Notes under the pieces: model-generated
What the model was told of the DNA's origin: nothing
Databases searched by the model: none
Seen by the model: the letters and a program-made list of their open reading frames with translations, nothing else
Shown: piece by piece, positions 40,652 through 46,105 of the stretch
How positions within the stretch are numbered: position 1 is the stretch's first letter
Layout: each line of letters begins with the position of its first letter
Assembly: GCF_000315625.1 (NCBI RefSeq)
Contig: NW_005434666.1
Location: forward strand, 543,877 to 607,876
DNA from: Guillardia theta CCMP2712
Lineage: Eukaryota > Protista > Cryptophyta
Direction of reading: 5' to 3'
Length of the DNA: 64,000 nucleotides
Program-made: the position numbers and the translations under genes

Positions 40652-41357
<706 letters not shown>

Positions 41358-41597: not shown

Positions 41598-41800
41598 AGG
41601 AGGACAAGGAGGACAAGGAGGACAAGGAGGACAAGGAGGACAAGGAGGACAAGGAGGACAAGGAGGACAAGGAGGACAAGGAGGACAAGGAGGACAAGGA
41701 GGACAAGGAGGACTAGGAGGACAAGAGGGAGGACAAGGAGGACAAGGAGGACAAGCAGGACAAGCAGGACAAGGAGGACAAGAGGGAGGACAAGGAGGAC
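41598..41800 (+). repeat. (GGAGGACAA)n 9-mer array immediately 5' of the ParA-ParA ATG
   Basis: Directly visible. Confidence 0.95.
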
Positions 41801-41814
41801 GGACTGGAGGCCTA

Positions 41815-44751
41815 ATGGCTCAAGAAGAATCCTCTCTTCCAGAATCCCTCGAGTCCTTTGCCATGCCCATCAGGAGGAGCACGAGAGTCTCCAAGAAGAG
41901 GTTGATGAGCATGGTCAAGAAGGAGGCTGCGGGGAAAGAAGCTATAGTTATCGCTCCCTTCATGCACAAAGGAGGCGTGTACAAGTCGTCGACGACGATC
42001 AATGCGGCTGCTGCGCTGGCTAGGAGTGGGAAGAAGGTTGCAATCATCGACGCTGATGGCCAGTGCAACGTGACATCCTTCTTTTATCCTGCCCCGGATT
42101 CTTTCGAGTCGGAGATGAACATGCTGAATGAAGGAGACAAGAAGAAGGCACAAGACGAGCGAAAGAAATCATCAAGGAGGAAGAAGCACGCGGATGCCTC
42201 GACCGGAGTCATTCTGGGCCTATCAGACAGAAGCTGTACATTGCCCAGCATTGATTCGATTCATCCCTTGACTCCCTGTTGTTTCGAGTTGGATACTTGG
42301 TTGCAAATCTCAGAGGATGACGAATCGTCGACCTCGGAGAAGTTTGACACAATATATGATGCTCTTTACCCAGCATTTGATCAAACAACCATGACTTGCC
42401 CAAAACTTCTTCCCATCGAGGATTACGACAACAATCTCTTCCTCTTGCCTGGCAGCACGGAGATCCATAAACTTGAGGCCATGATATCAAGCCAAATGTT
42501 ACGTGAATACGGTCCGATGTTTCTTGCTTTCAGGCATTTGTACAATCTGATCGCCAAACGGTACGATCTTGATTTCATATTTGTAGATCTGGGGCCCAAT
42601 CATCACGAGCTGAATATGGGCATTGTTCTCAGTTGTGACTACATTCTCCCACCTATTCATGCTGATTTTTATTCTGCAAGCTCAGTTCACAGGATGCTAC
42701 ATGTCCTACTTCCTTTCTGGAATGATTGGAGGGAAAGATTTGTTGCTGAATGCGATAGGAAAGCTTTCGAAGTGCCCTCAAATGTACCTTTCGCCTTTCG
42801 TAGACTTCCACGGATACTTCCTTTCTTGGTTCAAGGATACAAAATACCACATTTCCAACGGAGGCAGGTGAACAAGCTCTTTTCAAACTTCATCGTGTCT
42901 ATCTCTCTGATAGTACAAGACCACGAAATTCCCGAAGTAGTCAAAAAGATGTTCGTGGAGGATACCAAGACCATGGTCGTGCCGTTCTGTCCTGCACTTC
43001 CAGTGGCAACGAGGGTGAGTCATGAGGTTGGAATGCCTCTGGTACACATCGACCACTTCAACCTCAGCAATTTTTACGGACCGAGCGACAAGAGGACGAA
43101 GTTGCAATTCGACAAGATCAGGCCGGAGGCAGCCCTGGCTGAGAAGCGTTACGGGAGCTTGAAGATAAACCCAAAGACAAGGAAGAATTTGAGTCGATAT
43201 TTGTCGAGCCTTCGGGGGATTGATGTTCCTGAGGAGAGTGCACAGGAGCCTCAGGCAGATGATGTGGATGAAGGTGATTGGATGGTAAACAACGAAGATG
43301 AGGAGGATCAGGAAGAGCCGGAGGACGCGTGGAGCACATTGCGAGACTCTTGTCTCAAGGTTGCAGAGTGTCCTTCCGAGATGCATGGCAAGGAGGGGAA
43401 ATGCACGTCGATCGCAGTCTTCAATTACAAAGGAGGAGTTGGAAAGACCTCAGTCGTCATCTCCCTGGCGGCTACGCTCGCCAAGTTGGGCAAGAGGGTT
43501 TGTATCATCGATGGAGATGGGCAGTGCAATGCCACCTCCTTCTTCCATCCCGATCTCTCGCAGTTCGAGACTGAATTTCCTCGAGAGAAGTTCGGAAGGA
43601 GCGCCAAGCTGTTGTCGGATGATGTGGGCCATGGCCTGAAGGCGCTCAACCCCAAAGTGTTTGATTTCAAGAATTGGCTGGATGCGAACAGTCTTGATTC
43701 CAACAGAGACATCCACGACGCCATGCGCCCGGTCCTGGAAGGTAAATTAGAAGACATACGGTGCCCACAGCTCTTGTCAGTTTGCTCCTCGATGGGAGCA
43801 GAAATCTACGGTGGGAGATTGATGATCCTTCCTGGGAGCTCCAAGCTTTCCAGCGTGAAATTAAGCGGCACGCAACCACAAAGAGACATTCGAAACTATG
43901 GTGTGCTGCGAAAGATCTTTGACATGATGGCGGAGAAGTACAAACTGGACTTCATCTTCGTTGATCTTGGGCCAAGTGTGGGAGAAATCAACAAGGCGTT
44001 CGTGATGTCCTGTGATTTCATCCTTCCTCCTGCACATCCTGACTTCTTCTCCGCAAGTTCTGTGAGAGGGCTTTTACGCAAGATTTTGCCGGACTGGCTT
44101 GAATGGAGAGGCGAGCACAGAGAGAAATGGAAAAAGATCGATCAGAAGGCTCTCAACTCCATGAAGGATTTTCAGTTCTATGACTTCTCTGAGATCCCAC
44201 GAATCTTGCCTTTCCTGGTGCATGGATATGAGTTGGACAGCAACACAGAGAACGAGATGGAGCTATCGCATGCCAACTTTCTCAAGTGCATCGAGTATCT
44301 CGTTGAAGACAAAGAAGTTCCGTCGGAAGTCAAGAACCTGTATGTACGGGATAAGGATGACCTCATGGTGGTACCTTTCTGCTGCGCGCTGCATTTCTTG
44401 CCGAGCATCAGCCACAAAACGGGAATCCCCTTTGTGCACCTCACCGGACATCCTCTTGTCGAGGAAAGCTTCAAACAAGCCAAGACAAGGAGAAGGAAGG
44501 AGAAGAACGCTCTGACAGAGGCCACGATGGTCTCGGAGAGGTTCGAGAACCTGGCGAAGTTTATCATAGCGGTCGCTAGCGGCGCGAGTGGCAATGCAGA
44601 AGAGTCAGAAAGTGGGCTGCGGGTGGATGCCAGGGAGACGAGGAGGAATGGAGGTGGAAGGGAAGGATCATCACGGAGACGTGCAACTCGCGACAAGCAT
44701 GAGGATCATCGAACAGAAGACGCGAGATCGAAGAGAAGCCGCAAGCGCTGA
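41815..44751 (+). CDS. Intronless tandem ParA/Soj-family (AAA_31-like) ATPase, two fused domains
   Basis: Deviant Walker A HKGGVYKSS and YKGGVGKTS; IIDADGQCN / IIDGDGQCN; Walker B DFIFVDLGP twice; SCD(Y/F)ILPP twice; acidic linker; basic termini. Confidence 0.9.
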   Translation: MAQEESSLPESLESFAMPIRRSTRVSKKRLMSMVKKEAAGKEAIVIAPFMHKGGVYKSSTTINAAAALARSGKKVAIIDADGQCNVTSFFYPAPDSFESEMNMLNEGDKKKAQDERKKSSRRKKHADASTGVILGLSDRSCTLPSIDSIHPLTPCCFELDTWLQISEDDESSTSEKFDTIYDALYPAFDQTTMTCPKLLPIEDYDNNLFLLPGSTEIHKLEAMISSQMLREYGPMFLAFRHLYNLIAKRYDLDFIFVDLGPNHHELNMGIVLSCDYILPPIHADFYSASSVHRMLHVLLPFWNDWRERFVAECDRKAFEVPSNVPFAFRRLPRILPFLVQGYKIPHFQRRQVNKLFSNFIVSISLIVQDHEIPEVVKKMFVEDTKTMVVPFCPALPVATRVSHEVGMPLVHIDHFNLSNFYGPSDKRTKLQFDKIRPEAALAEKRYGSLKINPKTRKNLSRYLSSLRGIDVPEESAQEPQADDVDEGDWMVNNEDEEDQEEPEDAWSTLRDSCLKVAECPSEMHGKEGKCTSIAVFNYKGGVGKTSVVISLAATLAKLGKRVCIIDGDGQCNATSFFHPDLSQFETEFPREKFGRSAKLLSDDVGHGLKALNPKVFDFKNWLDANSLDSNRDIHDAMRPVLEGKLEDIRCPQLLSVCSSMGAEIYGGRLMILPGSSKLSSVKLSGTQPQRDIRNYGVLRKIFDMMAEKYKLDFIFVDLGPSVGEINKAFVMSCDFILPPAHPDFFSASSVRGLLRKILPDWLEWRGEHREKWKKIDQKALNSMKDFQFYDFSEIPRILPFLVHGYELDSNTENEMELSHANFLKCIEYLVEDKEVPSEVKNLYVRDKDDLMVVPFCCALHFLPSISHKTGIPFVHLTGHPLVEESFKQAKTRRRKEKNALTEATMVSERFENLAKFIIAVASGASGNAEESESGLRVDARETRRNGGGREGSSRRRATRDKHEDHRTEDARSKRSRKR

Positions 44752-45217
44752 GACGTTGAATGCTCGGAAGTTGAGGCACCGAAAGCTGATCTGAAAAACA
44801 AAATGTAGGTTTAAGTTTAATGCTAAATAACTAGAATTTCCACTTTAAGAAGAGTGATACCAAATAAATCAACTGAACACCTTGAAACTCCGATCACCTA
44901 CTCCATCTCACACTGAAGTACTACTATGTCATAATCAGATATCCAGAGAGGGCAGAGTTCAGCTCAATACTCTCTTTATTGACTGAAAAAGAAGGACAAA
45001 CCGGAGCAAACAAAGGAGGGGGAGGATAATGCACTACTGGGATACGAGTTCCTTGCCTGTTTGTGTTTGTGGTCGTTACAGACCGTTGCGCGATCCTCCA
45101 TACAGAAGAGGAAGCGAAGCGGGGAGGCGAAGTGAAGGGCAAGGAGAGTGTTCAGAGGAGACGAGACCGTCGACAAGTAGCAGCAGAGGAGGGTCAAACG
45201 CCACCAACCTGGTGAGC

Positions 45218-46105
45218 ATGCGTGTTGTGCAGCTAAACGTGAAGCGCTTTTATGGAAAGGAGAACTCGTCGACCGTGTTTGCCATCGCGGCAGCGCTTGC
45301 AGCACTGGATCCACGTCCTAACTTCGTGTGCCTCAATGAGGTGGATGTTAAGCTTCAGCCTGGTGGACTTGAAAAGATTGCAAGCTCGCTGGGACCAAAG
45401 TTCACGATCGCTTTCTTTGGTCACGTCAGAGATCGCTATGGCAACGCGATAATATCGAATTTGCCGGTGCTGAGCACAAAAACCTTCCAGCATCACATTC
45501 GAGGAGGAAGTACAATCAAACTCGAACCAGGTACAAAGAAATTCAACGGCGAAATCGCCAAGGAAGGTGACGTGCATAGGATAGCAAGGGGAATGCTGGT
45601 GGTCGAAACTTCGTTACCGACATCAGCGCTTCAGGCAGGGCAAAACCAGGAGAACCTCGGGACATCACTCCGAATAGCATGCACGCATCTTGATCACATC
45701 AGCAGTGAGCAGCGAAAGGTTCAGATGGAGCACATATGCGAGCTGCTGCCCCCGAGGCCTGATTGCACCGACCTACTCGTTGGGGACTTCAATGCCCTGA
45801 TGCGGGAGGATTACACAGACGAGCACTGGGAGAATCTCAGGAGCCTGCATGCAAGTCGAGGATGGGGGGGACCTTATTCCGGAGACCTTGCCATTGTTCA
45901 GGAGCATGGCTTCGTTGATTGCCTTGAAAGCGCTAAACCTCTGTCTCCACTACACTTGACTGCGCACGTCGGGGATCCTGCATATCGCCTTGATTACTGC
46001 TTCCTCCGAGGACGCCACATGAGGCCTGTGGGGAGCTTTGTGGATCGAACGATCGACTTCAGCGATCACTATCCTGTGATCACAGACTTTGACCTTGTGC
46101 AATGA
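45218..46105 (+). CDS. Endonuclease/exonuclease/phosphatase (EEP, DNase I-like) family protein, intronless
   Basis: MRVVQLNV, CLNEVD, YGNAIIS, THLDH, GDFNA, RLDY, SDHYPV. Confidence 0.9.
   Translation: MRVVQLNVKRFYGKENSSTVFAIAAALAALDPRPNFVCLNEVDVKLQPGGLEKIASSLGPKFTIAFFGHVRDRYGNAIISNLPVLSTKTFQHHIRGGSTIKLEPGTKKFNGEIAKEGDVHRIARGMLVVETSLPTSALQAGQNQENLGTSLRIACTHLDHISSEQRKVQMEHICELLPPRPDCTDLLVGDFNALMREDYTDEHWENLRSLHASRGWGGPYSGDLAIVQEHGFVDCLESAKPLSPLHLTAHVGDPAYRLDYCFLRGRHMRPVGSFVDRTIDFSDHYPVITDFDLVQ

What the first reader, a model, noticed from the sequence alone, without database searches (positions are those of the whole stretch)
41815..44751. Intronless fused ParA-ParA ATPase with NLS-like termini in a eukaryotic nuclear genome
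Seen: a 978-aa single-exon ORF in an intron-dense locus, holding two full copies of a ParA/Soj-type domain (about 41940-43170 and 43400-44580). An acidic linker joins them, and both ends are basic (PIRRSTRVSKKR; RSKRSRKR*). Known: ParA/Soj proteins are prokaryotic SIMIBI ATPases that form an ATP-sandwich dimer and bind DNA. The usual eukaryotic relatives are MinD, Nbp35/Cfd1/Ind1 and Get3/ArsA, and the motifs here do not match them. Inference: a horizontally acquired ParA was duplicated into an intramolecular pseudo-dimer and retargeted to the nucleus, possibly as an undescribed DNA-handling, segregation or defence ATPase. No ParB is visible nearby.
Basis: partly seen in the sequence, partly recalled or inferred. 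Interest (0 to 1): 0.85.

Follow-up and report, generated by a model that had tools for sequence, protein, structure and literature searches.

The report
Fused double ParA ATPase, cryptophyte alga
A real, transcribed nuclear gene of a cryptophyte alga encodes two ParA-type ATPase domains fused in one chain; it belongs to an old algal and protist branch of a ParA family whose closest bacterial relatives work with a HEPN RNase in defence modules, and its own function is untested.

Summary
Window 41815-44751 (+) is an uninterrupted 978-aa ORF with two complete ParA/Soj-fold domains. They are 37% identical to each other, joined by an acidic disordered linker and flanked by basic disordered tails. 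The window matches assembly GCA_000315625.1, which I take to be the Guillardia theta nuclear genome. The gene is transcribed at low level and unspliced, and Hanusia phi has a 70%-identical orthologue.

The fusion did not arise in Guillardia. At least 12 tandem orthologues exist, and their N- and C-halves form two sister clades (100/98 and 100/97), so there was one ancient duplication. Every N-half has the same altered Walker A (KGGVYK, upstream Asn lost). Every C-half is canonical.

The tandem clade sits inside a family from green algae, a haptophyte, a thraustochytrid and a giant-virus-like contig. Its bacterial sister clade was followed by a HEPN_RiboL-PSP gene in 3 of 3 cases checked. MinD, Get3/ArsA, Nbp35 and chromosomal ParA membership all fail.

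An October 2026 preprint already reports standalone eukaryotic ParA clades from defence-type bacterial ParAs, but not the tandem form. My best reading is a single-chain, asymmetric, ATP-gated switch, probably nuclear and possibly used in genome defence. That function is inferred.

The parts
41815..44751 (+). Whole single-exon coding sequence, 978 codons plus stop
   Evidence: ORF list. Same gene model in GCA_000315625.1. RNA contigs lie colinear with no joints inside it.
41815..41937 (+). N-terminal disordered basic tail (aa 1-41) holding the motif M-P-I-R-R-S-T-R-V-S-K-K-R
   Evidence: pLDDT below 50 for aa 1-40. Aligns with a conserved basic motif [KR]x[KR][KR]V..[IM].P in other tandem members. 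No hydrophobic signal peptide is visible in the sequence.
41938..43134 (+). N-terminal ParA-fold domain (aa 42-440) with variant Walker A
41968..41991 (+). Walker A of the N half, K-G-G-V-Y-K-S-S (Gly to Tyr; the Asn at position -2 is lost)
   Evidence: Coordinates. Tyr in 11 of 11 N halves, against G (88) or A (18) among the 119 other family domains with a readable motif. Asn at -2 in 0 of 11 N halves, against 105 of 119 others.
42049..42069 (+). Sensor motif D-A-D-G-Q-C-N of the N half (DxD plus Gln)
   Evidence: The motif is defined in the preprint.
42571..42597 (+). Walker B of the N half, D-F-I-F-V-D-L-G-P
   Evidence: Strand E254-259 in the model.
43135..43398 (+). Acidic, mostly disordered linker (aa 441-528, net charge -12)
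   Evidence: pLDDT below 50 for aa 469-507. Poorly conserved in alignment A1.
43399..44526 (+). C-terminal ParA-fold domain (aa 529-904) with canonical motifs
43429..43452 (+). Walker A of the C half, K-G-G-V-G-K-T-S, preceded by N-Y
43510..43530 (+). Sensor motif D-G-D-G-Q-C-N of the C half
43948..43974 (+). Walker B of the C half, D-F-I-F-V-D-L-G-P
   Evidence: Strand E713-717.
44527..44748 (+). C-terminal helix followed by a disordered basic tail (aa 905-978) ending K-R-S-R-K-R
   Evidence: Helix 899-924, then pLDDT below 50 for aa 925-978. Basic clusters at aa 954-961 and 970-978. A basic R-[RK]-S-[SA]-R-like tail is conserved in most tandem members.

Best explanation
This is a genuine, transcribed nuclear gene of a cryptophyte. 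It encodes a single-chain pseudo-dimer of two ParA-clade ATPase domains. It belongs to a eukaryote-centred family found in algae and protists, with one member on a giant-virus-like contig. The family carries the motifs of the ParABS-type, 'conflict' branch of ParA, and its closest bacterial clade is the ATPase of two-gene ParA plus HEPN RNase modules. One ancient internal duplication produced the fused form. Shown here: both halves keep the signature Lys, the Walker A Lys, the DxD-Q sensor and the Walker B Asp. The first site carries a fixed Gly-to-Tyr change and has lost an Asn. Inferred: ATP closes the two halves into an intramolecular sandwich with two non-equivalent nucleotide sites, a canonical catalytic C site and a slow or regulatory N site, as in other fused or heterodimeric P-loop pairs. 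The closed form then binds its matrix, most likely DNA or chromatin in the nucleus, through the C-terminal helices and basic tails. Inferred more weakly: the role is sensing or sequestering foreign or selfish DNA, not chromosome segregation.
Against: Nothing shows ATP binding or hydrolysis, DNA binding or localisation. The Tyr before the Walker A Lys could abolish nucleotide binding at site 1, which would make the protein a one-site enzyme. I could not inspect the model's coordinates, and no single-chain pseudo-dimer such as ArsA aligned across both halves, so the sandwich geometry is not demonstrated. No HEPN or other effector lies next to the gene or next to other eukaryote-type members. The gene shows no local expansion of the kind typical of immune genes. 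The NLS reading rests on patterns only. The mRNA 5' end was not mapped, and about 68 codons upstream are open in frame, so an upstream exon with a targeting signal is not excluded. The raw-read RNA run X16 gave almost no reads for any gene here, so expression level and transcript ends are unknown.
Confidence: 0.5

Rival explanations
1. It is a housekeeping positioning or segregation ATPase. It would use chromatin or an organelle nucleoid as a matrix to space out a cargo, as ParA, McdA or PomZ do, perhaps serving the nucleomorph or the plastid.
For: The best structural matches are the DNA-matrix ParAs Soj, ParA2, pNOB8 ParA and McdA. The family occurs mainly in plastid-bearing eukaryotes. It is conserved and single-copy in the window.
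Against: No signal or transit peptide for the complex plastid or nucleomorph is visible. No ParB-, McdB- or MinE-like partner lies nearby. The score against the ParA partition equivalog is 51.7 bits, against a cut-off of 180. The non-photosynthetic thraustochytrid Hondaea has a member. The nearest bacterial clade is HEPN-linked, not parS/ParB-linked.
Confidence: 0.17
2. It is a cytosolic ATP-driven chaperone or targeting factor built like ArsA or fused Get3: a two-lobed clamp for a protein or metal client, with no role on nucleic acid.
For: It has the same tandem architecture as ArsA and Chlamydomonas ARSA1. The P-loop region gives weak ArsA_ATPase Pfam hits.
Against: TIGR00345 (Get3) scores 23 bits against 135, and ArsA scores 26 against 650. 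Neither Get3 nor ArsA is among the top 50 structural matches. No Get3-type methionine-rich helical subdomain or ArsA metal-site cysteines were detected. The tails are highly basic.
Confidence: 0.08
3. It is a nucleotide-independent scaffold. One or both sites would be dead, and the protein would be kept for binding only.
For: The N-half Walker A is altered, Gly to Tyr with the Asn lost. A bromodomain-fused relative, P0268, has clearly degenerate P-loops.
Against: Both halves keep the signature Lys, the Walker A Lys and Ser/Thr, DxD-Q and the Walker B Asp across all orthologues. The C half is fully canonical. The two halves are equally conserved between Guillardia and Hanusia.
Confidence: 0.1
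4. It is an artefact or a recent intruder: bacterial contamination, a chimeric contig, or a recent giant-virus or bacterial insertion specific to this strain.
For: It is intronless and bacterial-looking. One family member lies on a giant-virus-like 753-kb contig.
Against: It lies in the middle of a 1.19-Mb scaffold among intron-containing eukaryotic genes, and the window has no gaps. Its GC3 of 0.59 resembles its neighbours. Runs from five studies hold it. There is an orthologue in another cryptophyte genus. Prokaryote genomes and IMG/VR gave only core-level matches at 21-30% identity.
Confidence: 0.02

Closest known systems
PDB 3pg5, DIP2308 of Corynebacterium diphtheriae (uncharacterised ParA-like protein, structural genomics)
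   Different: It is single-domain, bacterial and 361 aa, and lacks the large insert after strand 2 and the basic tails. Its function is unknown, so it explains nothing about the role.
Bacterial ParA plus HEPN two-gene modules (ParA/Soj-HEPN dyads of PMC3710099; 'ParA-effector systems' of bioRxiv 10.64898/2026.10.19.760177)
   Same: They form the sister clade of the eukaryote-type family (100/100). They share the Walker A and sensor features and are 345-357 aa long.
   Different: The bacterial ATPase is a separate single-domain protein with a HEPN_RiboL-PSP RNase gene directly downstream. No HEPN gene or domain was found in the Guillardia window or beside other eukaryote-type members.
Euk1/Euk2 eukaryotic standalone ParA clades (Li, Burroughs and Aravind, preprint, October 2026)
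   Same: [quoted passage not shown] The taxa found here fit that description.
   Different: They are described as standalone, single ParA proteins. The text never mentions tandem or duplicated forms, cryptophytes or Guillardia.
ArsA and fused Get3 (Chlamydomonas ARSA1)
   Same: Two homologous deviant-Walker-A domains in one chain joined by a linker, giving a pseudo-dimer with two non-equivalent nucleotide sites. This is the same design principle.
   Different: They belong to a different SIMIBI family. HMM scores are far below cut-offs, and they are absent from the top structural matches. The duplication is independent.
Soj / chromosomal ParA of ParABS systems, and McdA
   Different: Those are homodimers of about 250 aa that work with ParB or McdB. 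The ParA_partition model scores 51.7 bits against a cut-off of 180, and there is no partner gene.

Membership tests
ParA clade of SIMIBI NTPases | Deviant Walker A, KGGxGK[ST], with the extra signature lysine | tested here: met
   The C half has K-G-G-V-G-K-T-S. The N half has K-G-G-V-Y-K-S-S, which keeps both lysines but replaces the Gly with Tyr.
ParA clade of SIMIBI NTPases | DxD sensor motif after strand 2, and a Walker B ending in Asp | tested here: met
   D-A-D-G-Q and D-G-D-G-Q, and D-F-I-F-V-D in both halves. Motif definitions are from the preprint.
ParA clade of SIMIBI NTPases | ParA/Soj three-dimensional fold | tested here: met
ParA clade of SIMIBI NTPases | ATP-dependent sandwich dimer, here expected within one chain | tested here: inconclusive
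   pTM of 0.75 and 0.77 argues for a fixed arrangement of the halves.
PriB1 / ConB1 branch (preprint 10.64898/2026.10.19.760177) | Asn upstream of KGG, Gln two residues after DxD, and Val inside Walker A | tested here: met
   The C half has all three. The N half keeps the Val and the Gln but lacks the Asn. Across the family, Asn is present in 105 of 119 non-N-half domains.
Euk1/Euk2 eukaryotic standalone ParA | Placement as sister of bacterial transposon and prophage ParA lineages; a standalone single domain | tested here: inconclusive
   The taxon range fits. The bacterial sister found here is HEPN-linked, not shown to be a transposon or prophage lineage. This protein is a tandem, not standalone.
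Chromosomal/plasmid ParA of ParABS | Score above the NF041546 equivalog cut-off, and a ParB partner | tested here: not met
   38.4 and 51.7 bits against a cut-off of 180. No ParB domain among the genes within 10 kb either side.
MinD | TIGR01968 score, and a C-terminal amphipathic membrane helix | tested here: not met
Get3 / ArsA | TIGR00345 or TIGR04291 score | tested here: not met
   At most 23.3 bits against 135, and at most 26.3 against 650, with matches confined to the P-loop. Absent from the top 50 structural matches.
Nbp35 / Cfd1 / Ind1 (Mrp/ApbC) | ApbC equivalog score, or a full-length PF10609 match | tested here: not met
   At most 24.2 bits against 348. PF10609 matches only about 37 residues around the P-loop.

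The most novel reading that the evidence does not exclude
Algae and other protists carry a nuclear, single-chain ParA pseudo-dimer descended from bacterial ParA-HEPN abortive-infection modules. It would work as an ATP-gated sensor or sequestering clamp for foreign DNA such as giant viruses, virophages and transposons. The fixed Tyr-bearing first site would act as a built-in timer, and effector domains (a Ulp1 peptidase, a bromodomain reader) would be added in some lineages. That would be a previously unrecognised arm of eukaryotic innate genome defence.
Probability: 0.25. Interest if true: 0.8.

Novelty: new variant of a known kind. Interest (0 to 1): 0.55.

Why it matters
ParA ATPases are textbook bacterial machines, and until very recently were not counted among nuclear-encoded eukaryotic proteins apart from MinD, Get3 and Nbp35. 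This locus gives a concrete, expressed and conserved example in a genetically tractable model alga. It also adds something the recent survey did not report: an old covalent fusion with a fixed asymmetry between the two nucleotide sites. That makes two questions testable. First, what does a ParA do in a cell that segregates DNA with a spindle? Second, have bacterial ParA-effector defence modules left working descendants in eukaryotes? The pseudo-dimer is also a natural single-chain ParA. It would be useful for structural and mechanistic work, because the two sites can be mutated independently.

Tried and rejected
1. MinD, Get3/ArsA, Nbp35 and chromosomal ParA membership: rejected on HMM cut-offs and structural ranking.
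2. Known anti-phage systems in PADLOC: only P-loop-level hits to PDC-M28B, 17-25 bits. Uninformative.
3. IMG/VR viral contigs: only phage ParA P-loop matches and one 26% core match. No support for a virus-borne family there. The giant-virus idea rests on the gene content of a single 753-kb contig and was not verified.
4. Prokaryote genome scan: 21-30% core matches only. The scan depended on one peptide pattern, so it misses 3pg5-like proteins.
5. ArsA-style test of the two-half geometry by fold search: no chain aligned across both halves.
6. A conserved effector neighbour: the downstream EEP-family gene is not found beside other family members, and no HEPN is present in eukaryote-type loci or in the window.
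7. Raw-read RNA run X16: almost no reads on any gene of the stretch, so transcript ends, strand and level could not be read.
9. Literature: nothing on this protein or on tandem eukaryotic ParAs. The relevant papers were PMC3710099 and the October 2026 preprint.
Full report
**The observation**

Window 41815-44751 (+) is one uninterrupted 978-codon ORF. A look-up by exact sequence finds it as the annotated single-exon gene at 585691-588627 of scaffold JH992972.1 (1,194,225 bp) in assembly GCA_000315625.1. To my knowledge that assembly is the Guillardia theta CCMP2712 nuclear genome. The closest relative is from the cryptophyte Hanusia phi, which fits.

Each half passes Pfam's AAA_31 and CbiA cut-offs on its own. 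The halves are 37% identical to each other, E 2e-73. HMM bounds are aa 42-440 and 529-904. The linker has net charge -12 and both tails are net basic, with basic clusters at aa 115-125, 887-899, 954-961 and 970-978. The window has no assembly gaps. The ORF's GC (0.50) and GC3 (0.59) are like its neighbours. The one correction is that several neighbouring genes are also single-exon.

**Is it expressed?**

Runs from five studies hold the stretch. In the single read-laying run, runs X1 and X2 proved to be RNA. They carry GT..AG joints in the neighbouring glyoxalase gene (47152/47368 and 47525/47577) and have no depth over the intergenic DNA at 46.2-47.0 kb.

X2 covers the ORF in colinear pieces (41937-42279, 42426-42649, 42931-43489, 44247-44800) at depth 1-6, like the next gene downstream, and no joints were reported inside the ORF. 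X10 is genomic DNA. The raw-read run X16 gave almost no reads on any gene here. So transcription and the absence of introns are supported, but transcript ends and expression level are not known. The Hanusia sequence comes from EukProt; I believe that entry derives from a transcriptome, which would also indicate expression.

**What family is it?**

NCBIfam scores are far below the cut-offs for every named family:
- ParA partition: 51.7 bits against 180.
- MinD: 27 against 213.
- ApbC/Nbp35 type: 24 against 348.
- Get3: 23 against 135.
- ArsA: 26 against 650.

An AlphaFold model built on 16 tandem homologues has mean pLDDT 72.5 and pTM 0.75. It contains two complete ParA folds, with disordered residues at 1-40, 469-507 and 925-978.

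**The fusion is old and asymmetric**

Searches found at least 12 full tandem proteins of 887-1233 aa at 33-40% identity, plus many contig-truncated pieces of such proteins.

In three trees the N halves form one clade and the C halves another, and the two are sisters. Support is SH-aLRT 98, 98 and 97. In the careful search it is UFboot/SH-aLRT 100/98 and 100/97, with 100/96 for the joint clade. The branching order is matching in both halves: Guillardia plus Hanusia, then P0004, then the rest. One duplication therefore predates the split of the cryptophyte genes from the metagenomic clade.

Every N half has Tyr in place of the Gly before the Walker A Lys (11 of 11), whereas the other family domains have G (88) or A (18). 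Every N half has also lost the Asn two residues before KGG (0 of 11, against 105 of 119 elsewhere). All other catalytic residues are kept in both halves. The two halves are about equally conserved between Guillardia and Hanusia, at 76-77% and 79%. The N half is therefore specialised rather than decaying.

A second fold, of the 35%-identical orthologue P0007, again gave a high pTM (0.77), although 20% of its residues are disordered. Some chains align across model residues 42-605, which places part of the C-half insert against the N half. Both points argue for a fixed intramolecular arrangement. I could not read the coordinates, and no single-chain pseudo-dimer aligned across both halves. The sandwich geometry therefore remains an inference.

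**The wider family and its origin**

The tandem clade is nested in a single-domain family with a D-x-D-x-Q-C-N sensor motif. Named members come from Chlorella, Cymbomonas, Mesostigma (several paralogues with long N-terminal extensions), Prymnesium and the thraustochytrid Hondaea.

One member lies on a 753-kb contig. Its dense orphan genes, HNH/NUMOD endonucleases, ankyrin and cathepsin genes look like a giant virus, but this was not verified. Tandem members sit beside eukaryote-type genes such as RCC1 and a UCH deubiquitinase.

A family profile separates eukaryote-type members (278 bits or more) from the best bacterial proteins (157 bits or less). Scans of prokaryote genomes and of IMG/VR gave only core-level matches.

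The nearest bacterial clade (100/100) consists of 345-357-aa proteins. All three members I examined have a HEPN_RiboL-PSP gene directly downstream, and those HEPN proteins keep an Rx4-6H motif. In one case the pair lies between sdhA and sdhB, and in another beside an AAA_15/DUF4276 pair. These look like mobile defence cassettes.

**What is already known**

Anantharaman et al. (PMC3710099) described ParA/Soj-HEPN gene dyads and proposed that the ATPase is the antitoxin.

A preprint by Li, Burroughs and Aravind (bioRxiv 10.64898/2026.10.19.760177, October 2026) surveys ParA in prokaryotic immunity. It defines ParA-effector systems whose effectors include HEPN RNases and Ulp1-like peptidases. [quoted passage not shown] Its diagnostic motifs for the ParABS-type branch and its conflict sub-branch (Asn-x-KGG, DxDxQ, Val in Walker A) are all present in the C half.

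Its text does not mention tandem or duplicated forms, cryptophytes or Guillardia. So the existence of such eukaryotic ParAs is known, while the fused, asymmetric form is, as far as I can tell, new.

**Mechanism**

Shown here: two intact ParA folds in one chain, a canonical second site, a fixed variant first site, conserved basic tails and an acidic linker, and transcription.

Inferred from how ParA/MinD ATPases work (summarised): ATP closes the halves into a sandwich in which each signature Lys reaches the other half's nucleotide. The fusion makes dimerisation independent of concentration and lets the two sites diverge, as in ArsA.

The enlarged insert after strand 2 lies at the surface that binds partner proteins in ParA dimers. 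In most non-cryptophyte orthologues this insert carries a four-Cys module.

A nuclear, DNA- or chromatin-directed role is suggested by the lack of a signal peptide, the conserved basic tails, and relatives fused to a bromodomain (P0268) and to a Ulp1 peptidase (P0013, the nearest relative of the cryptophyte C half). A defence role follows only from ancestry and from the preprint's proposal. No effector partner was found here.

**Verdict**

The acquisition and the fusion are ancient and shared across a family, and they did not happen within Guillardia. Nuclear targeting and any DNA-handling or defence role remain untested. I classify it as a new variant of a known kind, of moderate to good interest.

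The scan's own notes list two more ParA/Soj-like genes elsewhere in this genome. I could not check them.

Noticed in passing
window 45029-46105 (+): An intronless gene of the endonuclease/exonuclease/phosphatase family (PF03372, 38.7 bits) lies 278 bp downstream on the same strand, which recalls the bacterial ParA-then-effector layout. The pairing is not seen beside other family members.
   Followed up: partly
window 41598-41800 and 40946-41169: Two long microsatellites: (AGGAGGACA) about 22 copies directly upstream of the ATG, in frame as a Gly-Gly-Gln repeat and open for about 68 codons, and (AGGAGC) about 37 copies further upstream.
   Followed up: partly
window 44973-45029: A purine-rich piece of about 55 nt just after the gene has depth above 100 in RNA and DNA runs alike, with loose ends on both sides. 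It is probably a short motif or low-complexity stretch shared with abundant transcripts.
   Followed up: no
window about 40652-40871 (-): A 54-aa product with the small DUF2256 domain is annotated about 940 bp upstream, in divergent orientation.
   Followed up: no
P0003, P0005-P0012 and P0140 (alignment A1 columns about 400-470); P0007 aa about 196-242: Most non-cryptophyte tandem orthologues carry a four-Cys insert (C-Q-x-C ... C-S-x-x-C) in the N-half insert after strand 2. It is modelled as a small hairpin plus helix and looks like a zinc ribbon. It is absent from Guillardia, Hanusia and P0004.
   Followed up: partly
P0268 (EukProt, 1378 aa) and P0013 (894 aa): Family members fused to eukaryotic chromatin or SUMO-type domains. 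P0268 has a bromodomain followed by two ParA-like domains with degenerate Walker A motifs. P0013 has a C-terminal Ulp1/C48 peptidase.
   Followed up: partly
L131 3372-5206; L124 6001-7718; L132 1000-2641: The bacterial ParA-like plus HEPN_RiboL-PSP two-gene cassettes look mobile. One sits between sdhA and sdhB, and another lies next to an AAA_15/AAA_21 ATPase plus DUF4276 pair.
   Followed up: partly
L005 (ENA contig of 752,887 bp): A single-domain family member lies among densely packed orphan genes with HNH/NUMOD endonucleases, ankyrin, cathepsin and FtsH-like genes, at 40% GC. This is giant-virus-like but was not verified.
   Followed up: no
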